This document shows positions 15,278-53,600 of a DNA stretch of 64,000 nucleotides, one piece after another. The notes under the pieces are model-generated. The model did no database searches. It was given only the letters and a program-made list of their open reading frames with translations, and was not told where the DNA came from. The DNA comes from Laetmonice hystrix (taxonomy: Eukaryota): contig OZ249436.1 in NCBI GenBank assembly GCA_965235115.1, positions 11,780,001 through 11,844,000 on the forward strand, in the 5' to 3' direction. Every line of letters begins with the position of its first letter. The stretch's first letter is position 1. A program made the translations under genes and the position numbers.

Positions 15278-18200
15278 TCAGGCATCAACAGTGTGAATGC
15301 CCTCCGCCGATCTCGTCAGAGATTTCTTCTCGTCTGGCAGTTTGATGCTGAGATCCTCCGAGTCGACGGTTCGTCCCACGGACGCCACCGAGCCGTTGTG
15401 GTGGTTGGACGTCCTATCTGAGCCCATCATCAGGGTGGTCGCCTCCAGGCAGTTCTCATCCTGGTTAGGGAACACCTCGTCGTCCTCGACAAACTCCTCC
15501 ACCTCTATGGTGCCACCAGGCATAAACACGTTAGCGATCTCCTCAAATGTCCGCCCCTTTGTCTCGGGAACTTTGTAAAAGACGAAGACAGTGAAGAGCA
15601 CCATCAGAACCAGGAAGATGATGAACGTATATGTCTTGCAGAGTTCCTGTGATGAAAGGAAATGAAAGAATGAAGCAGATCGTCACCCTACATAAGCTCA
15701 GCTACACCTACTGCAGTATGTCATACAATATTGTCTCGTTTGTTCAGGAAAGCAGGTTTGTAGATACCGGTAGATTGTATACTAATGAGAGCAAATATTA
15801 TATCAGCCCCGACATTGTGTCACTACACCCTACCTGTATGGACTCAAAGGAAATGGCAATGATGAATGTACAGATCCAGTTGGCCAGGCCGACTAAACTC
15901 ATGGCGCGAGGTCGGGGACCCTGTCGGAAAAGTTCGGCACCAATCATGGTGGGGATTGGTCCTGAAAGAAATAATTGCAACAATTGATTCGGCGCCACAT
16001 TTTGTGGGCATGAATGTTGCCGTCAGAGTTTCTTTTAGAGCAGATACTGTATTACAGTCATGTTCTATAATAACATTAATAGGTAATAGTGACTCTGATG
16101 CGTGTACACAGTATACTCTCAGACTAGATACGGATACATTTTTTACTATACATGTATAAGAAACGTCACTTACCTAGACCAACGGCAAAGCAAACGACAT
16201 ATGCAATGACACATCCAACACTGATGAATCGCATCCAATTCAGCTGATCCTACAATATGGACAGGCACGGATATTTTAACAATTTGAAAACTTAGTCGAT
16301 ATGTACATGTACACTGTACTTATATTTTAAGTATAAAAAATAAGGTACATGGCCAGCATTATCCATGTTCATACAAGTTCCACCATCGCCATAAGTGTCT
16401 GCAGAAACAATCGTAGCCGATATCACTGATACGGGTGGTTATTATAACCACCACGGAAGTATGTACCATGTCAATCTAAAATAAGTCAAACAAATGTGGA
16501 AGGATCCGCAAGCCGTTTGTACCTGAAGATTGAAGGCAATGGTGATGAGGACAAGCACGATGTTCATGCCAATCATTGGGAAGAGGAGGAGTGGACGGCG
16601 GCCGATCCTGTCAATGATTGGTACGGTGACGATGGTCATGATGACGTTCACAGCGTTCGTGCCCACCACAGCATACTGGATGCGATCCTCCATCACGCCC
16701 GCGTTTCTATAGATACCCGTCGAGTAAAAGAAAATCTGACACAAACAAAACACGCAAACGTCAGTGGTTACAAATAACGTCATTGGTTACAAATAACATC
16801 AGTGGTTACAAATAACATTAGTGGTTACAAATAATGTAAGTAGTTACAAATAATGTGAGTGGGTAGTACAAAATAACATCAGTGGTTACAAATAACATCA
16901 GTGGTTACCAATAACATCAGTGGTTACAAATAACGTTAGTGGTTACAAATAACATCAGTGGTTACGCATAACGTCAGTGGTTACGCATAACGTCAGTGGT
17001 TACAAATAACGTCAGTGGTTACAAATAACGTTAGTGGTTACAAATAACATCAGTGGTTACAAATAATGTCAGTGGTTACAAATAACGTTAGTGGTTACAA
17101 ATAACGTCAGCGGTTACAAACAACGTCAGTGGTCACAAATAATGTCAGTGGTTATAAATAACGTCAGTGGTTACAAATAACAGTGATCCTCCTAAGATGT
17201 CAATGCAGTCAAGATGATGAAAGTGCGAGTAACGAAAACGAATGGGTCTGAATGAAGAGAGAGATGGGATTTGTAATACTCACAGCATTGATGCCTGAAA
17301 ATTGTTGGATGACTTGGAGCATTATAGCAACCAAAAGTGGCATACGAAGTTCCTTGGTCTTGAGCAACATTGACATTGTATAGCTCTCCTCGGGCCCGGT
17401 CGATTCCTTGTTGTTCTCGCCACTCTCTGTCTCCATCTCCTCGATGTCAACAATGACATCGAGCTTTTTACGGTAAAAGCGAAGTGCCTTTTCGGCAGCC
17501 AAACGATTATTTCTGACAAGCATAAGATATCGAGGGCTTTCTGGGACGAATGGAAGAAAGACCAAAGAAAATAATGCGGGAAACGCATTCAACAGGAGGA
17601 GGTATGGCCAACCCGATTCAGTACCTGTAAAGAAAACAATCTATTGTTATGTGTGGGAAAGACAGTAATATATAACAATATACGGTATACAATCTACTAA
17701 ACGACATCATCCTTTTTTGCATTATATATACGTAAGAACTAAAAACATACAGTGTATGTGTATCACTATGTGTGTCCATGTCACAGTAAAATATCATAAT
17801 TACCCAAAACTGAACTCACCGAGGATCTCCCGTAAACCAAATATACTGCCCATAAAGATGCCAATAGTGATGAAGAGCTGATGGCCTGTTCCTATCGCAC
17901 CTCGCAGGTTGAAGGGAGCTATCTCCGTGAGATACATGGGGGCCAACTGGGTCGCAAACCCTGGGGGAAACAAAGGTAATTGTCTAACACATCAGCAAAT
18001 AATGTGACGCCTCCCTGTACATGTAAATCATTATTATGACACTTCTTTACAATACAACCGATACTCCTGTATGCGTTATTTCTGGCACTACAAATATTTG
18101 TCTTTTAAACAAAACAAGGGTGAAACTTGAAGCGTATAATGTTCAGACGGGGTATACTCACCACAGTTGAGTCCGGTGATGAGACGGCCGATCATGAGGA

Positions 18201-23750: not shown

Positions 23751-26700
23751 CTGTTGTAAAGAAAAGAGTGAAAAGGTATTAATATTATTTAGGCTTCTAA
23801 ACAATAACATTTTGCATGCGAAAAATTGTAGGAATTACGAAAAGAAAATACGAAAACAAAATAATCTGTGAGGACGTAAAGTATAATTATGTCCTGTATA
23901 TAGCCCACATACATAGCTTATTGTTTTAGTGTGTCCTAGTCTCTCTTGTACCCGATGTCCTTTTTCTAGTGTAGCTGCTATTTCTCACGTCCACCACCCC
24001 AAGGTTCACATCGTTTCCCAGTATTTACATTATACTATCCGGCCAAACGTACACAAACAGCTGCATTGCGTTTTTCGATTCGTTGAACCCGGCTTTCTGT
24101 GGCGGACGTTGCTGTCCTGGACTCCGTGTTTGCGCAGACAGTGTTAATATAAACATAAACATAAAAATGCTCGCGGAAGAGGCTCACCTAACCTAACATC
24201 TTGCCTTGTATCGTCACATTTCTGAACAAAGACCTATTTACATACACGCAAGCCTTTCCACCCACGCACGCTACCTGTATGTCTGCCTGTCTGTCTCTCG
24301 AGCTTTCTTCCTGATAAATGGCTCAGGTTTCATCCATGCAATAAAACGTAATATTTCACGCAAAATGATTAGGCCTTTATATTCGAGGGGTTGTGTGTCT
24401 TCGTTTACCATCGCCATTTCATGGAAAATCTCATCAAAAGAACACCATGGACGCAGGAATAATGTTTCGTTTGGCCTCGTTTTTTACTTATACCAAAAAT
24501 ATATAGTTTTAACTTAACACGAGGAAACCGCCCGTGAACAGTCTTGACTCCCGGCTGGGGACCTGACGGTTCAGACGGGAAGGTTCTGATTGGGTCCTGC
24601 TGCATCTGTTTGCATATAAACGCTGACCTTTGATGGGTTCAAGGTAGGACAAACCGACAACTACGATGTGGTGGTAATAAATCGTCTGGCTGTCATGTAC
24701 GTGGTGGCGGAGGCTGAATACATGCGGACTTGACGACGTGTTTTGCCGGTGAATGGCAATATCAATAAACCCGAGTCGTGTTATACCGGTGAGACAATGG
24801 CCTCAACCTTAACCTGACTATACGCTTCATCTATAGACATATAAACCTTTCACACCAGTAATTAGGTACCTAATATGGTACCTATTATACATACACATTG
24901 ACATACTTGAGCAGCGGGAACGGTTTTCTATCATTTCTATAGGTTTATTTTGATATACAGTATACTCGACCTCTATAATAAATATACATGGGGGCATGGG
25001 GGCCGGTGTTATAGTATTTACAATACTTACATGAGAAAAGTTAGACTGCATGATCATAACATACTGATCAAGAGAGTCGGGTGACCCAGACTGACAAATC
25101 TCGAGTATAGTGTGCTGTATAGGTGTTATATCAGACTCGGGACTGAGCCAAATTGGTTCTATATATGAGTTGGTCTCTATACCGGGGTGGTATTCAATAA
25201 CCAAGTAAGAACATTTTATTACAGGTGCACAGCTTTCCCAACCAAGACTGTACGGGGTGCATGTACAGGCACATCCACCACGGCTATGTATACGATCGAG
25301 GTCATAAAGTAGGCCTTCAAAGCGTTGAATTCCAGGAACCGTGATGACGCAATACGTTTGAAATATCCATCCGGGTCATATAATCGAGCCTGATGTTGGG
25401 CAACCTTGTCAACTAAAACTAGGTGTTTAATTAGCCCCCCCCCCCCAAAAAAAAAGGAAGACACGCATGCACATATCGAATAAGAAGCTAGATAGATATT
25501 TTCACATACACTCGCATCTCCACGGAAAAAAATCGCACAAAATGATTTTTTTCCTATAAGGACGTCATTTGCTTTCCTGCGGGAATCACATGAACATTGG
25601 GCATTATGGAGCAAGATGGTCTACACATGTCTATAGCCAAGGGTATACGTATACATGTATAGGCCTATGTTTACAAGACGATATCCTCTTTCCAACTGCT
25701 CCTTCTTGAGCAATTCACTCGGTCAACTGAGGTACTGCCTCCGGACTGCGCATGCTGTAAGGGACAATTCCTTCAGTGTCCTCGGCAAATACAGATGGCG
25801 CTCTCCACCTGCATGGTCAGCATTTCCTGCGTTTATTCTGGCGCCAACCACGGTTTCCGAGAAACGATGGCGACGTGGCTTTCCATCACTGCATAATGAA
25901 TGCACGTGGGGGTTTGGTCGGAGGCGGGGGCGGCTTTCTGCATCCTGATTGGCTGTCCCATCGCGCCGTCTCAACCAGCCAATACAGACACACCTCCACC
26001 TCGACCTCAGTCAGTCAATACCCTACTATTCTGGCATTCCATACCCAAACAACCTTGACACAAGGTGCCCTTGGCTGCACTGAACGATGCCAAATAGCAC
26101 TATATAGCTGTGTCGTGTATACACCTGAAATCCATTGGTATAATCGGGGTGAGGCATGCAGGACGGACGCAGGACTGGGCGCGTGCGTGCTTTGTACACG
26201 CATGCCTCCTTCAGCGCATGCACCCCCCCCCCCCTCGAATCTGATTCTGGAGTTACTATACCCCGTAATAAATTACCAAGCAGACAAACTACAGCTGTAT
26301 AGGGGACCTAGTCGCTGAAACTTCATGACGTATTTTTTATCATTATGCTGTTTATATGACCGTATTATTTCGAGGCGTTAATTATACCTCAGTGCCTGGT
26401 TGATCTCTACTGGCAGGCTACCCCTGCGGACGCCCATCATCGCTAGAGAAACATGCACGCCTGCCTGTCTGCTGAACGTGGCGGGGTCATGTAAGGACAC
26501 GCAGGCGCACACAGACTGGCCAAGGATGACACAGCATGCGGCGCTCACGTTTGTGTGCAGTACCTGAAGTAACCCAACTGGGGTTGGGTTGGCAGGCATC
26601 TTCATGCCGAAGAGCATTTCGTCCCTCGTTATTTGTATAGAGTTGTCTCGGTACGTTTCGTTCGTAGTATGATCTAAGTATAGGTATTTCCACTGATCGC

Positions 26701-39880: not shown

Positions 39881-40149
39881 AATCACACACGCGCTGCAAG
39901 GGTCACATGACCCTCCATGGATTTCTCCATGGATTTGCTCCATGGTTTTTCCGGTTCCGGTTTTACGTGACGAAATTTTTTGGTGAGACGGTATGTGTCA
40001 CCTTGGCAACCCTTTCACACGTGTTGTCATACCCAGCTAACAAAAACACGTGTTCAGCACGTGTCTGACACGTGTCAAAGTAGTGCAAAGCACGTGTCTG
40101 GGACACGTGTCCTTCACGTGTTTCTGTGAACACTTTTTCCCGTGTTAAA

Positions 40150-40990
40150 CACGTGTCATATACACGTGTCAGAAAGACGTGTAAAGAACGTGTCAAACAC
40201 GTGTTAGAAAGACGTGTCAAAAACACGTCTAAAGAACGTGTTAGACACGTGTTAGAAACACGTGCAGAAAGACGTGTAAAAAACGTGTTAGACACGTGTT
40301 GGAAACACGTGTCAGAAAGACGTGTAAAGAACGTGTTAGGCACGTGTTAGAAACACGTGTCAGAAAGACGTGTTAAGGACGTGTTAGGCACGTGTTAGAA
40401 ACACGTGTCAGAAAGACGTGTAAAGAACGTGTTAGACACGTGTTAGAAACACGTGTCAGAAAGACGTGTAACGAACGTGTTAGGCACGTGTTAGAAACAC
40501 GTGTCAGAAAGACGTGTAAAGAACGTGTTAGGCACGTGTTAGAAACACGTGTCAGAAAGACGTGTTAAGGCCGTGTTAGGCACGTGTTAGAAACACGTGT
40601 CAGAAAGACGTGTAAAGAACGTGTTAGACACGTGTTAGAAACACGTGTCAGAAAGACGTGTAACGAACGTGTTAGGCACGTGTTAGAAACACGTGTCAGA
40701 AAGACGTGTAAAGAACGTGTTAGGCACGTGTTAGAAACACGTGTCAGAAAGACGTGTAAAGAACGTGTTAGGCACGTGTTAGAAACACGTGTCAGAAAGA
40801 CGTGTAACGAACGTGTTAGGCACGTGTTAGAAACACGTGTCAGAAAGACGTGTAACGAACGTGTTAGGCACGTGTTAGAAACACGTGTCAGAAAGACGTG
40901 TAACGAACGTGTTAGGCACGTGTTAGAAACACGTGTCAGAAAGACGTATAAAGAACGTGTTAGGCACGTGTTAGAAACACGTGTCAGACT
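40150..40990. repeat. 48-bp tandem array (~17 copies), four ACGTGT motifs per unit
   Basis: Unit ACACGTGTCAGAAAGACGTGTAAAGAACGTGTTAGGCACGTGTTAGAA; period 48 (40501 to 40549). Confidence 0.96.
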
Positions 40991-41159
40991 GGTTACAAAC
41001 ACGTGTTTGGTACCAGATTGTTACCAGTATAGAACGTCTTCTTCGCGTCTATAGCACGAGTTTTATTTTGCCGTTGATTATAAAATTTAATGAGTAGAAA
41101 AAAACACACAAACAACATGTTTCAAGTTAATGTACCTTTATTGTATTAACTCTTTATTC

Positions 41160-43165
41160 CACTTTAATCCTCCTCGGACATTGCAGGCCGCCTCCTTGTT
41201 ACTGCACTGACAGGTTGGGGCACCTTTAACGAAGAATAAAACACATGAGAATAGTCACACTCCTCACAAAGCAAAACTCGGTGGGGGTGGGGGTGGGGGT
41301 GAGCTATGTGTGATTTTCTTTAGATGCATCGGCATAACCCATGCTGTTACTTTGAGAATGTCCGGAAAGAGAAAAGTTGTAGGCCTATAATCCTCTACTG
41401 GAATTTAACCCGGGCCCCAACATTACTGCACCCAGGTATCGCCGCTTGTGTGTGGGTGTGTGTGGAGGGGGGTGAGCAGGATTTTGAAGTACAATGAAAA
41501 TACTACTAACCATTGTGTTGGTTTTTTTGCGTTGGCCTTGAGATATTCGGCAAGTGCCTTGTCCACAATTAACTCCGAATATTTCTCTGGGGACTTCCGT
41601 CGGCACGCTCCTATTGACAACAATGAAACTGACCTCATTACATATTCCATTTTTGGACTTGCTATTTTTTCAAAACTTTAAAAAAAGTTTTGCAAAGTGT
41701 ATATTTGATATACTTACGTCTGATCACGCCGTATACGCATGTTGCGTCAAACGCCTTTTTTTGTGGTCCCATGCCGTTCCCCCTGGTCGTACCTGTGCCT
41801 CTTCTGCCCACGAAGACTGTAGCCCTTCAATCGTTGTCAAATAGGATATCTGTATACCAAAAAGGACAGCTAATAAGTAAGGTTCAAGGTATTATAATGT
41901 TGATGTATATTTCTTTCTTTGCTTGGCTCCTTCGTGTTATTTTAACTATGTTTTTAGAAAAGGCACAATACTTAATCCTGTGACCAAATACTAGGCCTAT
42001 ACTAGTACGTTCTTGCATCCAGCCATTAGTGTTTTGCATACATTCACTGCAGTTTATGTAATTAATATCATTTTTTTCTTAGTCATGTGGATGCATGAAA
42101 ATGCCCCCGACTCATTTCTGCCGCCTAGGATGACATTCCGATGGTTGTCAGACTCCATGGCGCGCCTTTCCCAGACTCCATGTTCCAGTCACCCCGAGTC
42201 AGGTGCATGGTCAACTAAACGGGCGGCGGTCGCCCATGTTCCCGATACGGGAGTCCACAGGTGGCCGTCTTTAGATGGGGCCAGATATGCCAATTTGGTC
42301 AAAAATCTCTTACCGAGCACTTAAAATAACAGGAATTCGTCGCAATAACCGCTGACTAATGAAATGATTGCTCAAAACTTTTATTTAGATCTATAGGGAG
42401 AAATATCGACTGGAGAATAAAATGTACACTTGGGACATGAAGTCTCACATACTGGGACATAGCGCGTATATATATGGAGCATGGAGTCACTCACCCCATA
42501 GGGGTTATAGGCCTACTGGGGGGGGGGGGGCAAAGTAAATGCTTAAGAGATGGGGGCCCTGCCCCCCCGGATCTGGCACGTAATCAACTGATACACCCAT
42601 TTGTGACTACACCGTGATCCTATAAAAACTGCATGTGGCGTATCCAGGGGGGTTTCCAAGTATCCCGGAACCCCCTCCACCCTTAAAAAAATTACTATAT
42701 TAAGGACATTTTGGTAAAACAAGGGGTTTAAATTATATTATTTTAACCTAAGGAACCTTCAACCTTCACATTTCCACACAAGATGTCCCGGGATTATTTG
42801 ATGTCTTTTTAAAAAAATTCCTAGAGAACCATGGCGGTAGCTATAGTAGTATAACAACACAGCCACACCATGTGTCAGACTCCTGTGAGGATACCTAAAC
42901 TTCGGAAACCCCCCTTAAACATTTCTGGATACACCACTGGACTGGCTGTGATTCCTTGACATAACATTGAAGGATATTAAGAAAACGGACTCACCAAGAT
43001 CAAGGTTTACGGTGCTGATTGATTGACAGGCGCTACAAGTTGAATCCGCACGACGGTTTGGTGAATCTGAAACCGTTGACACGTGATTCCCGCCAAAGGC
43101 GGAGGCAGAATCATCAACCTTCTGACCTGCCGGTCTTTCAAACATATCAACTCTCTAACTGGGTT
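41160..43165 (-). pseudogene. Decayed spliced gene encoding a BEN/DUF4806-like domain protein, inside the TIR element
   Basis: Exon-like pieces ~42970-43165, ~42090-42320, ~41718-41850, ~41499-41610, ~41160-41228 give ...STCSACQSISTVNLDL / VLGKRFLTKL...VILGGRNE / ILFDN..LKGYSLRGQKR...KKAFDATCVYGVIR / RACRRKSPEKYSELIVDKALAEYLKANAKKP. There are two frameshifts and one in-frame stop. Two AATAAA follow on the minus strand (~41130-41150). Confidence 0.5.
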
Positions 43166-44567
43166 AATTACTCCATCGTGCATGCGTGTAAGCACAGAAA
43201 GTATTTACTTAAGCCGACCTGTGACCTACATAAGAAGGGGTAAACTATGATTAACCTGAAGCTGGAGGAGCAATATGTAATGACGCTGAGTGAGAAATGA
43301 AAACTAGTAGACTAAATCAATATAAAAGAAATCGTATAGCATTGTTACGTGTTTGGAACACATTCAGCGGGGCTGGGGTATCGATAAGGTTCACATGGAA
43401 CTTTAAAACGTGGGTATAACTTTGGTGATGTGCTTTTATGACCTCTTGCATGGTGGCCCAGCATGCTCTATATATAGCTGTGATCGGGTTACTGGAGATC
43501 GCACCCCCTTCATCAGTGCAGACATATTATATAGATGTACGGTGCAGACAAATCAAGTTTATGTAAAGAGGGGGGTTTTCAAGTATCCCGGACCCCCCTT
43601 AAAAAATTACTATATTTTGGACATATAACAGGAGTGTAAAAAGTGAATTATTTTAACCAAGAAAATTAATCTTCATATTTCCAAACAAGACGATTGCATT
43701 ACCGGTATTTAGTGTCTTTTTAAAAATTTCCCTAAATTGGCCTAAGGCTGTCGGAGCCCGTGGAGCACTGGATTCAGATCGGGGTAGCTGTATGGGAGAA
43801 GTACGGAGGGCTTACATATGTACTAAATCCTTTTAGCCCAAATTTACCACACTTATGGAAACAAGTCTTGTAAATGTGTAATCAAATTTAGTTAGAGCTT
43901 ATGAAATAGAATGAAAGGCACCCCAAAGAAGCGATTAAAATAGGCAGACAGATCTATTTGAAGTTTCGTAATGTGCAGAACACATAAAGGCTATAATAAG
44001 GCCACATTTGATAGTATTTGAACATTTTTTGACCAATTACCGCGACTTCAAGAAAGTTATCGCTTTTTAGTGTAAGTCTCCAGTAACGTCTGGGCGGACC
44101 AGAAATGTGAAATAGTCAATTTCCTTAATTACGCATGAATTCGCCTGATACTTTTAATATATTCTCTTTGCTACCTAGAAAAACGATTTGTGGTGGTTTT
44201 CTCCTGGTTTAAAATTGCACGGAGCCAAAAAAAACTCAAATAATGCACCCTGGCCCCCCAGCGCTTGTGCTGCCACCTATCGGTTACCAGACGTGGTCAC
44301 ATTACGATAAACTTTAAATTACGCCGGATTCATTTTCATTTTCACACAAACACTTCAGTGCTTAATAGACCTACGATGAGGATACCACGTGTATCTTTCT
44401 ATGGATTTGTACAAATATTATGGAGGCCTATATTATAACTGTATAACTGTATTTAAAAAAACGCTTCTGAAGGCTGGCATTGTAGTGCATGTTAGCCCTA
44501 CAACAAATAGCGTACATTATACGGTAATCAAATCATATAGCCTAGGCCTAGCTGCATAATTGGGTAG

Positions 44568-46270
44568 GTATTCACCACACCAGTTTGGCATCAGATAGAC
44601 ACGTCCCACTAATATCACCGGTGAGGTCAACACGTTCTAAACACGTGTTATACACGGTAGGTGTTCACCACACCAGTTTGACACCAGATAGACACGTCCC
44701 ACTAATATCACCGGTGAGGTCAACACGTTCTAAACACGTGTTATACACGGTAGGTGTTCACCACACCAGTTTGACTCCAGATAGACACGTCCCACTAATA
44801 TCACTGGTGAGGTCAACACGTTCTAAACACGTGTTATACACGGTAGGTGTTCACCACACCAGTTTGATCCCAGATAGACACGTCCCACTAATATCACTAG
44901 TGAAGTCAATACGTTCTAAACACGTGTTATACACGGTAGGTGTTTACCACACCAGTTTGACACCAGATAGACACGTCCCACTAATATCACTGGTGACGTC
45001 AACACGTTCTAAACACGTGTTATACACGTTAGGTGTTCACCACACCAGTTTGACACCAGATAGACACGTCCCACTAATATCACTAGTGAGGTCAACACGT
45101 TCTAAACACGTGTTATACATGGTAGGTGTTCACCACACCAGTTCGACTCCAGATAGACACGTCCCACTAATATCACTGCATGGTGAGGTCAACACGTTCT
45201 AAACACGTGTTATACACGGTAGGTGTTCACCACACCAGTTTGATCCCAGATAGACACGTCCCACTAATATCACTAGTGAAGTCAACACGTTCTAAACACG
45301 TGTTATACACGGTCGGTGTTCACCACACCAGTTTGACACCAGATAGACACGTCCCACTAATATCACTAGTGAAGTCAACACGTTCTAAACACGTGTTATA
45401 CACGGTAGGTGTTCACCACACCAGTTTGACTCCAGATAGACACGTCCCACTAACATCACCGGTGAGGTCAACACGTTCTAAACACGTGTTATACACGGTA
45501 GGTGTTCACCACACCAGTTTGACACCAGATAGACACGTCCCACTAATATCACTGGTGAGGTCAACATGTTCTAAACACGTGTTATACACGGTAGGTGTTC
45601 ACCACACCAGTTTGACACCAGATAGACACGTCCCACTAATATCACTGGTGAGGTCAGCATGTTCTAAACACGTGTTATACACGGTAGGTGTTCACCACAC
45701 CAGTTTGACACCAGATAGACACGTCCCACTAATATCACTGGTGAGGTCAACACGTTCTAAACACGTGTTATACACGGTAGGTGTTCACCACACCAGTTTG
45801 ATCCCAGATAGACACGTCCCACTAATATCACTAGTGAAGTCAACACGTTCTAAACACGTGTTATACACGGTCGGTGTTCACCACACCAGTTTGACACCAG
45901 ATAGACACGTCCCACTAATAGCACTGGTGAGGTCAACACGTTCTAAACACGTGTTATACACGGTAGGTGTTCACCACACCAGTTTGACACCAGATAGACA
46001 CGTCCCACTAATATCACTAGTGAAGTCAATACGTTCTAAACACGTGTTATACATGGTAGGTGTTCACCACACCAGTTTGACACCAGATAGACACGTCCCA
46101 CTAATATCACTGGTGAGGTCAACACGTTCTAAACACGTGTTATACACGGTAGGTGTTCACCACACCAGTTTGACACCAGATAGACACGTCCCACTAATAT
46201 CACTGGTAAGGTCAACACGTTCTAAACACGTGTTATACACGGTCGGTGTTCACCACACCAGTTTGATTCC
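44568..46270. repeat. 93-bp tandem array (~18 copies) containing ACACGT and ACACGTGT motifs
   Basis: Unit CACCACACCAGTTTGACACCAGATAGACACGTCCCACTAATATCACTGGTGAGGTCAACACGTTCTAAACACGTGTTATACACGGTAGGTGTT; period 93 (44573 to 44666). Confidence 0.97.
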
Positions 46271-47647
46271 AGCTAAACACGTGTTAAACACGTGTCCTGT
46301 TTGCTGGGTAGAGCTCGCTTCGCGAGCCGCTGCGCGGCTCGCTTGCGCTCGCTACTACATGTAGACTACATTGTATATCGGCCCAGGCCTCGATCGGGAT
46401 AGCAGCAAGAACGGTGGAGTGTCCGAAATTAGGCCTAGGCCTATTAGGCCTAGGCCTATTTATGAATAAAATTATAGGCTAGGCATATAAATTTAATAAG
46501 CCTAATTTTAATTAGCCTATTGCCTACTTAAAAAGTAGGTCTAACGTATAAGCCTAGGTACCGTTTTTCACTCTGTGCATGTTCTTTGAGGACCGACTTT
46601 ATTTTGACAACTTTGTTTTTCTTTTATTTTCTTTCTATTTTCTTTCTTTTTTCTAAGGGGGGCGGGGTTGTACCCCCCCCCCCCCCCATCCGGCCCTGTA
46701 TCTATAGGCCTAGACGGGGTATCCAACCATGCAGGGGGGAGGGGGCAGAGGGGATTGGGGGCACGTGCCCCTCAGCCAAATTGGGTTTATTCCCCCATAG
46801 ATTCTAGGCTTACAAGAATTGCAAAAATTTCCATTGATGGGGGGGGGGGGGGGAGGGGGGGGGGGCGAAAGCAGGGCTTATAGGAAGAGGCGATCTAGAC
46901 CTATGCTGTAGGCATCAACTTGCATGTGTCGCAGCGGTGGATGGTGGACACGGCACCACAGAAAAAGCAAATCGAAAGTTTTTCTTCCCGCTTATAATAT
47001 TTTTTTAAAGTATTACAAACAAAACCAAGAACAAAACCTTTTGGCACCGATCTTTCTGGTAATCATTATAGATCGGAAACAAGATGGAAAGTTATGCCCT
47101 TAACAGAAATAAGTACGCGCAAATTCGAAACCAATTAGAAGTATAGACATAGAAAGTTTCTCAAAGGAAATTGATTTAGCCTTCTTTATCTGTCATTATG
47201 TTCAAAGGGTTTTTTTTTTAAACATTTTGATGTAATGAATCGCTTGTATACTAGGCATATGGAGTATAGCTTTCAAGCCGTTTCTAGGTTCTTTGTTCAG
47301 GGGGAAAAGAAAGTAACAAAATATGCATGGTCTTCTAGCTGTCTTTTTTCAATCTTGTAATTTAGTTGAAGTCTTATCATTTCTTTCGACATGCACTTTG
47401 GACTTTTTTGCCGGTTGCGTGTATATTTGAGAACATACAAATTTAATCCATAATCCATTAAATGAATATGGCAGTATCTTTGTATTGGCCTGGGTCTATG
47501 CATTTTAACTTCAAGACGACCAGGATCGTTTGTGAGAGGCCTAGATTCGTCACTTTAGGTGTTCTTTGAAGTATTTCACTATAAACCCGTTGTACAATGA
47601 GAGAGGTTTAAAGACAGCGTCTAACATTCCTGCTGCACATTGAATCC

Positions 47648-50600
47648 ATGGCGTCACACGATAGGGTTCCGTTCAGACAGAAAGCGTTTCTCGCCGGTTG
47701 GGTTTTCTCCCTACTCTGTGCAGCACAGACTCAGGCCCCGACTGGGAACGCTACATCTGCTGATGAAGAGCTAAAAGATCTCTATCTTCTGGGAATGTTT
47801 CCTATGCAAGGACAATGGGCCGAAGGGCCCGGCTATTCCATGGCAGTTCTCTTGGGCCTTGAAGATGTTAATACCAGACAGGACTTGCTGCCTGGTTATC
47901 GACTTAACATGATTTGGAACGACACCACGGTAAGCAGGACCTACTACAGAGATATACAACCGACCGGGCTAAAGAATCGGATCCTGGGGTGCGTTCCTCA
48001 TCATGTCGTTAGCTTGTCGTATCGTTAACTCCAATGTATTTTCAATGGGGATTTTAACGCACGACAGGATAACGATAGATGAGGAACGCACCCCAGGCTG
48101 GATTCTGTCAAGTGGGGTTGTAGGCATAATGCACACCCACCATTGATCATGCAGCCAACAAAAGCTCTTGGGCGTGCAACTTTGTGTCATAGGACGCCCT
48201 GTATGAAATGGGGGGCGGGGGGGGGCGGGGGGGGGGAGATCTACTCCGGTTCGGTCTAACCAACACATGGCTCTATAATCAGCACTGACCACCGGTAAAT
48301 TCTACAATTTCTTCTCTTTTCCAGTGCGACAGAGGCGTAGGCGTCAACTTGATGGTGAGGCTGTTGTACGAGAATCCGCGTAAACTGTTTATAATGGGCG
48401 GCGGGTGCTCTACCGTTACCCAAGCAACAGCCGAGGCTTCCCATCTCTGGAACCTTGTACAGGTAACGGTACCAACCCCGTAACCACGTGAAGGTGGCGG
48501 CGGGGGCACACTCTAACTAACCCTAACCGTTACCCAGGCCACAGCCGAGGCTTCCCATCACTGGAACCTTGTACAGGTAACGGTACCAACCCCGTAACCA
48601 CGTGAAGGTGGCGGCGGGGGCACGATCTAACTAACCCTAACCGTTACCCAGGCCACAGCCGAGGCTTCCCATCTCTGGAACCTACAGGTAACGGTACCAA
48701 CCCCGTAACCACGTGAAGGTGGCGGCGGGGGCACACACTAACTAACCCTAACCGTTACCCAGGCCACAGCCGAGGCTTCCCATCTCTGGAACCTTGTACA
48801 GGTAACGGTACCAACCCCGTAACCACGTGAAGGTGGCGGCGGGGGCACACTCTAACTAACCCTAACCGTTACCCAGGCAACAGCCGAGGCTTCCCATCTC
48901 TGGAACCTTGTACAGGTAACGGTATAACCACGAGAAGGTGGCGGCGGGGGCACACACTAACTAACCCTAACCGTTACCCAGGCCACAGCCGAGGCTTCCC
49001 ATCTCTGGAACCTTGTACAGGTAACGGTATAACCACGAGAAGGTGGCGGCGGGGGCACACACTAACTAACCCTAACCGAGGCTTCTCATCTCTGGAACCT
49101 TGTACAGGTAACGGTAGGCCTACCAACCCCGTAACCACGTGAAGGTGGCGGCGGGGGCACACACTAACTAACCCTAACCGTTACCCAGGCCACGGCCGAG
49201 GCTTCCCATAGATCTCTGGAACCTTGTGCAGGTAACGGTACCAACCCCGTATCCACGTGAAGGTGGTGGCGGGGGCACACACTAACTAACCCTAACCGTT
49301 ACCCAGGCCACAGCCGAGGCTTCCCATCTCTGAAACCTTGTACAGGTAACGGTACCAACCCCGTAACCATGCATGAGAAGGTGGCGGCGGGGGCACACAC
49401 TAACTAACCCTAACCGTTACCCAGGCCACAGCCGAGGCTTCCCATCTCTGGAACCTTGTACAGGTAACGGTACCACAACCCCGTAACCACGTGAAGGTGG
49501 CGGCGGGGGCACACACTAACTAACCCTAACCGTTACCCAGGCCACAGCCGAGGCTTCCCATCTCTGGAACCTTGTACAGGTAACGGTACCAACCCCGTAA
49601 CCACGTGAAGGTGGCGGCGGGGGCACACACTAACTAACCCTAACCGTTACCCAGGCCACAGCCGAGGCTTCCCATCTCTGAAACCTTGTACAGGTAACGG
49701 TACCAACCCCGTAACCACGTGAAGGTGGCGGCGGGGGCACACACTAACTAACCCTAACCGTTACCCAGGCAACAGCCGATCGAGGCTTCCCATCTCTGGA
49801 ACCTTGTACAGGTAACGGTACCAACCCCGTAACCACGTGAAAGTGGCGGCGGGGGCACATCCTAACTAACCCTAACCGTTACCCAGGCCACTGCCGAGGC
49901 TTCTCATCTGACTACCTTGCAGCCTACAGGTACCAACCCCGTATAACCACGTGAAGGGGGCACACCGGCAGGGCCCAGTTTTTCAAAAACTTGAGTAAAG
50001 CTTACTGAAGTAAACTAACAGCCTTCTGATTGGCTGGATGGGAATTTGTTCTATAACGAAATTGTTAGAAAGAAGGAACGATTTATGCTATAGTATAAAT
50101 GCCGGATGTGATAATGTCCGCCTCCCTTATTAACCCTTGCCCGCTTTCTCTTATTCTTGAACCAGTTTATACCTTTATTTCCTTTGTCATAGATTTGCAC
50201 AAAGTACTAAACAGAAAACGGTAAATAAAAGATCCACCATTCCTCCATCCGCGACAGCGTGCCTGAAACGTTTTCTGATCGTGTCTGATGGAAATCTCCC
50301 ACCTATTGTATACATGACATGGTAATAGATCTAATACACTGTTTTTCTAACTGCCTTAATAGGCCAATAATGTGCATTCAGAGTTACTGCACGGCATCAA
50401 TGGTTAGTGGTTTAAGCAACGCGGTAGGATAGATTGCGCATCTTTTAATAGCAAAATAAAGTCGATGTGGGTCCATTCAAAGCACAAGGCTGCATAAGTA
50501 TCACCTCGTCCTGCGTGCGTTGATGGTTGCTAATACGCAAAATATCTCCTCAAGACGTAGACCTCAATCTAAAGATCTATGCAAAGACGCTCAGTGTTTG

Positions 50601-53600
50601 AATGTATACAGAAAGTATAGGCCTACTTAGTAACTTACAAATTAACCGTGATGTATTGCCTGCACGGAAATGTTGGCTGTATACATTGTGCTCCAAGGTG
50701 TAAGTTAGGGGGAGTGCCTCCTTACTCATCCGTGACGGCTCTTTCTCCTACAGCTTTCCTACGCCAGTACGTCACCCGCACTGTCGGACCGCTTCCGGTA
50801 CAAACGCTTCTTCCGCGTTTCGCCGTCAGAAAACGTCATCAACCCTACTCGTGCTGCCCTCATGCGGCTTTTTAAATGGAAAAGGGTTGCCACAATACAT
50901 GAAGGCGTCGAGTACTATTCTAGGGTATGCCTTTCACAAAATTATTGATAAGGTAGGACCGATATAAATAGTATTTATAGGCCAGGTTCCCGCTATTCAA
51001 CTGGTATGACATTATTGATATATGCCTCCAAACGGACGGAACAAATATGAATAGATCTATTTTCGTTCAGGTCACAGAAGATGCCATACGCTATTTGAAT
51101 GAGTACAACATAACTCTCATAACATCCGAAATCTTCACTGATGACGTGTCCCTTCAAGTCAGCAATTTAAAGGTAGGCCTACGGCAACATGGTACATGTG
51201 TACATCCAATTCATGGGGAAAAAGTTTATAATGTAAATGTGCATGAGTGTGAAAATTTACTTGTCTGTATCGTGGTGCACTTCTTTGGAGCGCCTTGCCA
51301 TAAATTTAGCCGATATTATGTATCTATATGTATATGGCAGCGTCAGGACGCCCGCATCATTGTTCTGTCGGCGTACATCGACAAGATCCGGAAGGTGCTG
51401 TGCGAGGCGTACCGCCAGGGTCTGTACGGACCCCGTTATGTCTGGTTGATCCCGGAGTTTTACCCGGAGGGCTGGTGGGCGGAGTCAGACGGTGGTTGTA
51501 CTGGAGCCGAGCTGACTGCTGCCGCTGACGGACTCATCGGCACCAGGAAACTCTACCATGACCCCCGTAAACTTGTCGGCATTTCTGGCATCAACGTGGA
51601 CGACTTCTGGGAACGCCTGTGGAAGCGGATTGACTGGCACGAACCTGGTATCATCCAGGGCTATGACGCCGCTTGGGCTGCCGCTATCGCTCTGAATTTT
51701 ACCATGCAAGAACTGAAGTCAAGAGGTACTATGGCTGATAAAACTGATGGCGATGATGATGGCGATCTTATCTTCACGTTACGTTCTCAAACATTACAAT
51801 GTGTGCAGGGCTTGCAGAAATCAATGTCTTTCATGTATCAGAGGCCTTTATAGGATTCACTGAAAGAGGGTGTGTTTTTCCAACGAAACTGTTTTATCCT
51901 TGATTGCACAAATCGATGTCTTTCATGACAAGAATCCCATATGTCTTTAGAGTGTACGTTATTTTTTGTGTTATCCGTGCGTGCCTATAAAATGCCGTGT
52001 CCTTTGAAAGGGATTGAGAGAGGTCTGGAAGACTTCACGTACGGGGACGATGTAATGGGACAAATAATGTACGACAGCATGTGGAAGGTAAACTTCAAGG
52101 GTATCAAAGGTGACGTATATTTCGACCCGAAAACTGGCAGCGCCCCGGGCAGCATTCTCATCCAACAAATTCAAGGTATACGGCTGAAGATTAACAACTA
52201 TTGCATCAAAATTGTTGATATGTTGTTCTTTTTTTATGACATTATACACATTGACATCAGTGAACCCTCTGCTCTTCCTATAGATGGCATACGCGTGACA
52301 ACTGGTGTGCATTACCCAGGAGGCGATGGGCAGTTTGAATGGTATCCCGACACACCACTGAAATGGAAAGGTAAAGAGGCGTAAACTTATAATAGCTAAA
52401 ATCACAGAAAACCTTGAGGACAGAAGGGGCCTACATGATCCTCCACAGTTGTTCTTGATAAAGACTATCTCAACCTGCAATCTATCATGGCAGTAAAATC
52501 AATCTGAGTGAAGCCTACTTTCTTTCTCTATAATTCATCACTGAGGGTCTCTCGTGTGCCCCTACATGGTGTGAGTACATGACCCACGTAAACGTGGCAC
52601 GCTCAACATGAGCCGAGTTTCTTCCCTTGCCGCAGGGGGTAAGCCTCCCCCCGACTCGACGCTCATCGTCCTCAGACCCGCCTTCGTGTCCGCCACAATG
52701 TACGCTGCCATGTGCTCCGTCGCTGCCCTGGGAATGATGATAGCAATTATCTTTCTAATTTTCAATATTTACTTCAGAAAGGAAAGGTACGAATACTATA
52801 TTATATAAGCAGTTCAGCTGTAATCTCCATCTATAATTATGGAAGTGCCGAGTCATTATGTTGTGAAGTCGATAACTCTTTCTAACCACAATACCTCCTC
52901 CACCATCATTGAATAAAGAAAACTGTTTTTCCTCAATTTTGAATAGCTCCTATTTAAGTACTTAATTCCTTTCATGTTTTCTAACGTCAGATATATCAAA
53001 ATGTCGTCACCTGTCATGAATAATATAATCCTCATGGGTTGTCTGGTGACATACGCCACTGTCGCACTCCAGGAACTCGACCCATCTACAGCACTGCTCT
53101 TCTGCAAGGTACACATTTCACCCCAACTTATGTAATTGGTCTGACTGTATCGATAGGCTCCTTTGAAGTTATGCCCAACGTTCATATAGCACAGATAATA
53201 TTGTGTCAACGACTAAAAACGTGGTTATATATTACACTGAATGCTCCAGGCACGTTTATATATTACACTGAATGCTCCAGGCACGTTTATATATTACACT
53301 GAATGCTCCAGGCACGTGTATATTACACTGAATGCTCCAGGCACGTGTATATTACACTGAATGCTCCAGGAACGTTTAGATATGACACTAAATACTCCAG
53401 GCACGTTTATATATTACACTGAATGCTCCAGGCACGTTTATATTACACTGAATGCTCCAGGCACGTTCGTGGACGGTCATGACTGGTTTTTCGATGTCCT
53501 TTGGTGCATTGTTCGTGAAAACCTGGCGGGTTCATGCCATCTTCACCAATAAGACAAAAAGAGTGGTACGTATCTTGTTCTTGTCTATGCTTACCCAGAC

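What the first reader, a model, noticed from the sequence alone, without database searches (positions are those of the whole stretch)
45170..49790. Palindrome-creating micro-insertions caught in single array copies
Seen, using sister units as the ancestral state: GGTACC to GGTAGGCCTACC (49115-49122), CCCATCTC to CCCATAGATCTC (~49210), GCCGAGG to GCCGATCGAGG (~49780), an AACCATGCATGAG variant (~49370), CACACTCT to CACGATCT (~48624), and in the 93-bp array CACTGGTG to CACTGCATGGTG (~45178). Nearly every insertion generates a short palindrome (AGGCCT, AGATCT, CGATCG, ATGCAT, TGCA). Inference: a recurrent template-switch, hairpin-opening or transposon-footprint mechanism is active, and the arrays act as a natural mutation-reporter.
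Basis: partly seen in the sequence, partly recalled or inferred. Interest (0 to 1): 0.72.

Follow-up and report, generated by a model that had tools for sequence, protein, structure and literature searches.

The report
Palindromic micro-insertions in tandem repeat copies
Single copies of tandem repeats in this animal genome have gained tiny 4- or 6-letter insertions that are palindromic far more often than chance allows: one is a scar type that is common genome-wide and looks like a jumping gene's exit mark, while the others follow a [quoted passage not shown] rule whose cause is still open.

Summary
All six variants are in the assembly at the stated places: five insertions (+6, four of +4) and one double substitution. 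The 45177 insertion also sits in a separate copy of the same 6.3-kb element on another chromosome.

In 59 arrays (68 kb, from a 254-kb sample of the genome), 7 of 10 single-copy, non-duplicative 4/6-bp gains are palindromic; 0.58 are expected (P about 1e-7). In arrays outside the finding the count is 4 of 6 (P about 1e-4). None of four 4-bp deletions is palindromic.

There are two classes.
- **A:** GGTACC to GGTAGGCCTACC is TA to TA-GGCC-TA. This scan has already reported that scar elsewhere in this genome. It occurs 38 times in the window against 0.66 expected, is enriched only with TA flanks, and recurs independently in another array. It has the form of a Tc1/mariner-type excision footprint. 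The source element was not found.
- **B:** the 4-bp gains have the form XY to XY + 2 nt + XY, and the filler is usually the reverse complement of XY (TG-CA-TG, GA-TC-GA). This fits hairpin-opening (P-nucleotide) or double template-switch repair. It fits non-TA transposon scars less well.

The double substitution has no statistical support. Four of the events cluster within 700 bp of one array.

The parts
48412..49961 (+). 114-bp minisatellite, 13.8 units. It amplifies an exon end plus its GT splice donor and holds four of the palindromic gains within 700 bp.
   Evidence: TRF; units split; exon 48325-48462 translates open; a downstream open frame at 50981-51850 hits ANF_receptor PF01094.
49115..49122 (.). 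Class A scar: TA to TA-GGCC-TA (+6) at the centre of GGTACC, giving a 12-bp palindrome at 49113-49124.
   Evidence: The same gain occurs independently at L017:1196 and in the L013/L018 satellite. TAGGCCTA: 38 in the window against 0.66 expected.
49208..49215 (.). Class B gain (+4): AT to AT-AG-AT, equivalently T + AGA (reverse complement of the following TCT) + TCT. It creates AGATCT.
   Evidence: No template within 400 bp.
49368..49375 (.). CATGCATG (+4): either a tandem duplication of CATG after CpG to TpG, or TG to TG-CA-TG.
   Evidence: ambiguity 4, so classed as a duplication.
49777..49782 (.). Class B gain (+4): GA to GA-TC-GA (or CGA-T-CGA). It creates CGATCG.
48621..48628 (.). CACGATCT: two adjacent substitutions relative to CACACTCT in units 1 and 4. 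It creates only GATC.
   Evidence: Same unit length (114); no test supports it as non-random.
44563..46282 (+). 93-bp subterminal array (18.5 units) of a 6.3-kb TIR element (40032-46308) flanked by TA.
   Evidence: TRF; element ends read.
45177..45182 (.). Class B gain (+4): TG to TG-CA-TG in one 93-bp unit.
   Evidence: The identical unit is in the element's sister copy on C12, and the flank is unique to C1.
49474..49475 (.). Ordinary +2 tandem duplication (CA), for contrast.

Best explanation
The variants are real mutations of two kinds, and both are repair products of 2-nt staggered breaks.

**Class A (49115).** A TA dinucleotide became TA-GGCC-TA. This has the form that a Tc1/mariner-type cut-and-paste element leaves when it excises: the duplicated TA target plus two terminal nucleotides of each inverted end (GG...CC), joined by end joining. 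It is one instance of a genome-wide scar.

**Class B (45177, 49208, 49777, perhaps 49368).** A dinucleotide XY became XY + 2 nt + XY. The two filler bases are usually the reverse complement of XY, giving an inverted micro-triplication. The filler is dictated by the flank, not by a mobile element's ends. The likeliest origin is addition of palindromic (P-type) nucleotides when a hairpin-capped or fold-back end is opened and rejoined. An equivalent origin is a forward, backward, forward template switch over 2-3 nt during repair or replication.

The 114-bp array is a local hot spot for such breaks.

Shown: the anatomy, the statistics, the recurrence, the TA specificity and the presence of open Tc1/mariner-type transposase frames.
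Inferred: the excision origin of class A and the hairpin or template-switch origin of class B.
For: **Palindromic gains against chance.** 7 of 10 palindromic against 0.58 expected, P 1.5e-7. In arrays outside the finding, 4 of 6, P 1e-4. A 2-bp duplication at the junction is present in 7 of 10 against 1.46 expected, P 1e-4. None of four 4-bp deletions is palindromic.

**Class A.**
- TAGGCCTA occurs in 75 distinct contexts in 254 kb against 3.7 expected. It is the top 8-mer palindrome of the sample.
- Only TA-flanked forms are enriched: NN-GGCC-NN with other flanks is not, and TA-G(n)-C(m)-TA is strongly enriched only for n=m=2.
- Independent TA to TAGGCCTA gains occur at L017:1196 and in the L013/L018 satellite.
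- TACATGTA is also enriched (39 against 5.8).
- Tc1/mariner elements leave 2-4 terminal nucleotides between the TA copies (PMC6943129).
- The genome holds DDE_3 frames open for 355 and 490 aa.

**Class B.** The inverted-copy rule fits 3 of 3 non-duplicative 4-bp gains in the finding (P 1.4e-5) and L019:7993 outside it. No template lies within 400 bp on either strand.

**Real DNA.** The 45177 gain is present in a separate copy of the element.
Against: - No element with TA|GG...CC|TA ends was found. The one abundant TA-flanked GGG...CCC MITE has A-TA...TA-T flanks in 40 of 40 copies, unlike the scars.
- The class B sample is small (5-7 events), and the strict inverted-copy rule was met by only 1 of 4 events outside the finding.
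- GC-AT-GC (L001:8467) and AT-AG-AT (49208) do not fit the 2+2 rule.
- CATG recurs as filler or insert in 4-6 events. This hints at a sequence-specific source (a CA...TG element) rather than a flank-templated one.
- Always +4 is not predicted by free template switching.
- Raw reads were not examined for the 114-bp array.
Confidence: 0.5

Rival explanations
1. All the gains, including the 4-bp ones, are transposon excision scars. On this reading class B events are partial footprints of TA-type elements with CA...TG or GA...TC ends. Those elements would have integrated at non-TA dinucleotides (TG, GA) or lost one TA copy on repair.
For: - CATG is part of the gain at 45177, 49368, L019:7993, L001:8467, L001:3002 and L009:2126.
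- L019:7993 and L009:2126 abut a TA.
- TACATGTA and TAGATCTA are enriched only with TA flanks.
- Every clean event has a 2-bp duplication like a Tc1/mariner target duplication.
- Sleeping Beauty integrates at non-TA sites with TG/CA preferred and true duplications (PMC5801840).
Against: - Non-TA integration is about 1.4% in Sleeping Beauty, yet here non-TA events (45177, 49208, 49368, 49777, L001:8467) are as many as TA events.
- The partial TA scars TACATA and TATGTA are not enriched.
- NN-CATG-NN with non-TA flanks is not enriched.
- The fillers AG and AT match no common end.
Confidence: 0.22
2. The variants are ordinary unrelated indels. The palindromes are coincidence plus selective reading.
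For: - 4-bp palindromes are common by chance.
- The CACGATCT variant and the GTAC gain at 16866 are weak cases.
- Pre-existing inverted repeats at the sites are not significant.
- There is no k-mer excess of XY-revcomp(XY)-XY 6-mers.
Against: - Exact null over all 4/6-mers at the same sites gives P 1.5e-7 overall and 1e-4 in arrays not used to form the idea.
- The identical 6-bp gain occurs at two unrelated TA sites.
- Deletions show no such bias.
Confidence: 0.04
3. The variants are consensus or assembly errors inside repeats, not mutations.
For: The only runs found are contigs from one sample, probably the assembly's own source.
Against: - The 45177 gain was assembled identically at two loci on different chromosomes.
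- Known long-read errors are homopolymer indels, not 4-6 bp palindromes (my own knowledge).
- The same TA to TAGGCCTA gain is seen in unique DNA and in satellites on several chromosomes.
Confidence: 0.06

Closest known systems
Tc1/mariner excision footprints (e.g. Sleeping Beauty TAC(A/T)GTA; PMC6943129)
   Same: A TA target duplicated, with a few terminal transposon nucleotides kept between the two TA copies. The scar is palindromic because the ends are inverted repeats. TA specificity and a weak symmetric R-TA-Y context are also shared.
   Different: - The element that would supply GG...CC was not identified.
- The outcome is unusually uniform: only n=m=2 is strongly enriched.
- The scar is the most over-represented 8-mer palindrome of the sample, about one per 3-4 kb.
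- I found no published report of this motif.
P (palindromic) nucleotides from opening of hairpin-capped ends, as in V(D)J coding joints and hAT/Transib-type excision sites (my own knowledge)
   Same: The added bases are the reverse complement of the adjoining flank (TG then CA, GA then TC, AGA before TCT) and are 2-3 nt long.
   Different: Here the flank dinucleotide is also duplicated and the net gain is always +4. No 5-8 bp target duplication of a hairpin-forming transposon is present. No hairpin-forming enzyme is implicated.
Short template-switch mutations, four-point model (PMC5453318, PMC7954356)
   Same: The change can be written as leaving the template, copying the complementary strand backwards, then returning. 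It creates or extends an inverted repeat in one event.
   Different: The inverted tract is 2-3 nt. That is far below the tract lengths such studies can call, by my recollection, which I did not check in the papers. There is no significant pre-existing quasi-palindrome at the sites.
Polymerase-theta end joining with templated (snap-back) insertions (my own knowledge)
   Same: Small gains with 2-bp junction microhomology. The same array has microhomology-flanked deletions of 9 and 18 bp.
   Different: Snap-back needs a loop and usually comes with a deletion. These are pure gains with a zero-loop inverse copy.

Membership tests
Tc1/mariner-type excision footprint (class A, 49115) | Sits at a TA, with the TA present on both sides of the filler. 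| tested here: met
   Sister units read GGTACC and the variant reads GG-TA-GGCC-TA-CC. The same holds at L017:1196. Only TA-flanked GGCC is enriched.
Tc1/mariner-type excision footprint (class A, 49115) | The filler equals the terminal nucleotides of a resident element's inverted ends. | tested here: inconclusive
   No TA|GG...CC|TA element was found in 254 kb. The MITE family at L005:3213-3604 has GGG...CCC next to TA, but its flank pattern is incompatible with the scars.
Tc1/mariner-type excision footprint (class A, 49115) | The genome encodes Tc1/mariner-type DDE transposases. | tested here: met
   PF13358 matches above the cut-off, with open frames of 355 aa and 490 aa in several identical-scoring copies. 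Their ends could not be read.
Tc1/mariner-type excision footprint (class A, 49115) | Filled, empty and scar alleles exist at the same site. | not testable with these tools
P-nucleotide or inverted template-switch insertion (class B) | The inserted bases are the reverse complement of the immediately adjoining flank. | tested here: met
   Met at 45177, 49208, 49777 and L019:7993. Not met at L001:8467 or window 16866.
P-nucleotide or inverted template-switch insertion (class B) | More frequent than random fillers at the same sites. | tested here: met
   3 of 7 scored automatically against 0.16 expected, P 3e-4. This becomes 4 of 7 after correcting L019:7993. Outside the finding it is only 1 of 4.
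P-nucleotide or inverted template-switch insertion (class B) | A pre-existing quasi-palindrome or hairpin at the site, as in the classical quasi-palindrome correction model. | tested here: not met
   Site-centred inverted-repeat scores are not unusual against all positions of the same arrays (p 0.04 to 0.98).
Templated filler from nearby DNA (end-joining filler) | The insert plus at least 3 nt of flank is found elsewhere within a few hundred bp. | tested here: not met
   No direct or inverted match within 400 bp for any key event.

The most novel reading that the evidence does not exclude
This genome has an active, sequence-independent process that makes 2-nt staggered breaks and reseals them through hairpin-type ends, writing XY to XY-revcomp(XY)-XY. 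The agent could be a domesticated or off-target hairpin-forming transposase or nuclease, with hot spots such as the 114-bp intronic array. This process would be separate from the TA-GGCC-TA scarring, and together the two would account for most non-slippage short insertions in the species.
Probability: 0.15. Interest if true: 0.75.

Novelty: new variant of a known kind. Interest (0 to 1): 0.52.

Why it matters
Short insertions are usually put down to replication slippage. In this sample of arrays, 7 of the 34 unit-specific gains of 2 bp or more are palindromic 4/6-bp gains, the same number as are plain tandem duplications.

One kind (TA to TAGGCCTA) is so frequent that it is the most over-represented 8-mer palindrome in the sample. 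If it is a transposon exit scar, it records an enormous history of insertion and excision by an element still to be identified. It would also let excision rates be read directly from minisatellites.

The 4-bp class, if confirmed genome-wide, would be a natural signature of hairpin or template-switch repair at a scale (2-3 nt) that standard comparative methods cannot call.

Tried and rejected
- **Raw-read check.** Local scripts (TRF, k-mer counts, self-BLAST) did read the whole window file.
- **Nearby templates for the inserts.** None found.
- **Sites at pre-existing inverted repeats.** Not significant. A predicted ssDNA fold of the 114-bp unit (z -2.4) places 49208 in a loop, but this is post hoc.
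- **k-mer excess of XY-revcomp(XY)-XY.** None.
- **Partial TA scars TACATA/TATGTA and TAGGTA/TACCTA.** Not enriched.
- **Source element for GGCC.**
  - TA-flanked TIR scans found only pairs of scars and unrelated foldbacks.
  - The MITE at L005:3213-3604 (at least 827 candidates, 97-98% identical) was rejected on its flank pattern.
  - Long ORFs of the sample hold no DNA transposase.
- **Literature search by motif.** Nothing relevant.
- **Exact-protein look-up of an ORF across the 49115 scar.** Not on record.
- **Pfam on the 46-aa exon.** No hit.
Full report
**What is there.** The window is G000:C1:11780001-11844000 of a 627-Mb, 35-contig animal assembly that is very rich in minisatellites.
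- +6 at 49115: GGTACC to GGTAGGCCTACC.
- +4 at 49208: CCCATCTC to CCCATAGATCTC.
- +4 at 49368: giving CATGCATG.
- +4 at 49777: GCCGAGG to GCCGATCGAGG.
- +4 at 45177: CACTGGTG to CACTGCATGGTG.
- A double substitution giving CACGATCT at 48621-48628.

The 114-bp array also has a plain CA duplication and deletions of 3, 9 and 18 bp. From the sequence, the two longer deletions appear flanked by short direct repeats.

**Are they real DNA?** I could not look at reads. Indirect support exists for one event. The 91 nt around the 45177 gain occur with 100% identity at G000:C12:15979924-15980014, while about 470 other units of this family match without the four bases. The DNA to the right of the element (46700-47500) is unique to C1. 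So the gain sits in two separate insertions of a 6.3-kb TA-flanked TIR element (40032-46308) and predates a recent transposition.

I aligned 59 arrays (67.9 kb) to their tiled consensus and called unit-specific indels. Ten gains are single-copy, non-duplicative and 4 or 6 bp long.
- For each I enumerated all 4- or 6-mers at the same site, weighted by the sample's own spectrum, as the null.
- Seven gains are palindromic in some equivalent placement, against 0.58 expected (P 1.5e-7).
- Leaving out the events named in the finding, 4 of 6 are palindromic against 0.33 expected (P 1e-4). L019:7993 was re-read by eye as TG to TGCATG.
- Seven of ten have at least 2 bp of junction duplication, against 1.46 expected (P 1e-4).
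- None of four 4-bp deletions is palindromic.

**Class A, TA to TA-GGCC-TA.**
- The same six bases were gained at an unrelated TA in a 68-bp array on another chromosome (L017:1196).
- Between two related 863-bp satellites, L013 has gained GGCCTA plus TGTA at a TA, and L018 has gained GGCCCA at another TA.
- TAGGCCTA occurs 38 times in the window against 0.66 expected from dinucleotide shuffles.
- In the 254-kb sample it occurs in 75 distinct contexts against 3.7 expected, making it the commonest 8-mer palindrome.
- The excess is specific. No other NN-GGCC-NN palindrome is enriched, and among TA-G(n)-C(m)-TA forms only n=m=2 stands out strongly.
- TACATGTA (39 against 5.8) and TAGATCTA (16 against 5.8) are enriched in the same TA-only way.
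- The flanks show only a weak R at -1.
- One-substitution neighbours are modestly in excess (152 against 90), which suggests that many scars are young.

This anatomy is what Tc1/mariner excision leaves: two TA copies around the first and last 2-4 nucleotides of the element (PMC6943129). The genome has Tc1/mariner-type DDE_3 frames open for 355 and 490 aa in several identical-scoring copies. I could not read their ends, and no TA|GG...CC|TA element is in my sample.

One abundant young MITE looked promising: L005:3213-3604, at least 827 candidates at 97-98% identity, with TA next to GGGAGCG. Its copies carry A-TA...TA-T in 40 of 40 cases, whereas the scars have A at -1 in only a third. I therefore do not take it as the source.

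Earlier follow-ups in this scan reached the same reading of TAGGCCTA on other DNA of this genome and also failed to find the element.

**Class B, the 4-bp gains.** All clean cases have the form XY to XY + 2 nt + XY.
- TG-CA-TG: 45177, L019:7993, and 49368 if its ancestor was CATGAG.
- GA-TC-GA: 49777.
- AT-AG-AT: 49208.
- GC-AT-GC: L001:8467.

In the first two types the filler is the reverse complement of the duplicated dinucleotide. 49208 fits as T + AGA + TCT, an inverse copy of three bases with one base re-copied. L001:8467 does not fit. Against the exact null, the inverse-copy rule is met by 3 of 3 events in the finding (P 1.4e-5) and by 1 of 4 outside it.

The filler is set by the flank. 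That is the mark of P nucleotides from an opened hairpin end, or of a forward, backward, forward template switch (PMC5453318), rather than of fixed transposon ends.

**The transposon reading of class B is not excluded.**
- In its favour: CATG is part of 4-6 gains, two of them abut a TA, and Sleeping Beauty does integrate at non-TA sites with TG/CA preferred (PMC5801840).
- Against it: that pathway is about 1.4% of integrations, whereas here non-TA events equal TA events.
- Also against it: the partial TA scars TACATA and TATGTA, and non-TA NN-CATG-NN forms, are not enriched.

**Other tests.** No direct or inverted template lies within 400 bp. The sites are not unusually centred on pre-existing inverted repeats. 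XY-revcomp(XY)-XY 6-mers are not over-represented genome-wide.

**The remaining two variants.** The 49368 gain may be a simple tandem duplication. The CACGATCT variant is an ordinary double substitution without statistical support.

**Local clustering.** Four of the roughly ten palindromic or 2-bp-flanked gains lie in 700 bp of one array that makes up 2.3% of the array bases. By my own arithmetic that is a binomial P of about 6e-5. It is post hoc, since this array was picked for it. Its units are no more diverged from their consensus than those of other arrays (match fractions). The array is G+C-rich and lies beside an exon of a gene whose downstream open frame hits ANF_receptor. Its unit folds well as single-stranded DNA (z -2.4). 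Why it is a hot spot is unexplained.

**Verdict.**
- Class A belongs to a scar type already found repeatedly in this genome by this scan. It fits a known kind of event (Tc1/mariner footprints) with an unidentified source and unusual abundance.
- Class B is the new element of this finding. It is supported statistically but by few events, and its mechanism is inferred, not shown.

Noticed in passing
window 40032-46308; G000:C12:15978910-15980586: The 6.3-kb TIR element (ends CCCAGC.../...GCTGGG, flanked by TA) has a sister copy on C12. Its 93-bp array matches unit for unit, including the 4-bp gain, while the window's right flank is unique. The element has therefore moved very recently.
   Followed up: partly
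L005:3213-3604 (G000:C2:3003213-3003604): A 392-bp MITE with 12-nt ends GGGAGCGTAAGT: at least 827 candidate copies, and the 40 scored are 97-98% identical and full length. All carry A-TA...TA-T at the borders, so the target is ATAT-like or the ends include TA.
   Followed up: partly
G000:C8:24451919, C19:12277760, C1:10730686, C1:25870834, C8:28970965, C20:8972931, C5:35104913: Tc1/mariner-type DDE_3 matches in frames open for 355 aa and 490 aa, in groups with identical scores. These are candidate active transposase genes whose ends were not read.
   Followed up: no
L013 (C5) versus L018 (C8): Two arrays of a related 863-bp satellite on different chromosomes, about 85% identical. They differ by TA to TAGGCCTA-type gains in both directions, and by a TATGTA gain next to one of them.
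   Followed up: partly
window 46428-46460 and 25652-25667; L003:7345-7831: Scars are stacked or clustered: TAGGCCTAGGCCTA twice at 46430-46458, TACATGTA directly followed by TAGGCCTA at 25652-25667, and eight TAGGCCTA within 500 bp in L003.
   Followed up: no
window 48325-48462 and 50981-51850: The 114-bp array repeats the last 51 nt of an open 46-codon exon together with its GT donor. A downstream open frame on the same strand hits ANF_receptor (PF01094).
   Followed up: partly
L003:4324-5714: A foldback-like element with 320-nt arms that are 98% complementary, with smaller nested inverted repeats inside.
   Followed up: no
L016:1-10000: The whole 10-kb stretch is a 54-bp satellite (186 units) that stays open in one frame for up to 1503 codons.
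   Followed up: no
They were left out of every later search.
   Followed up: no
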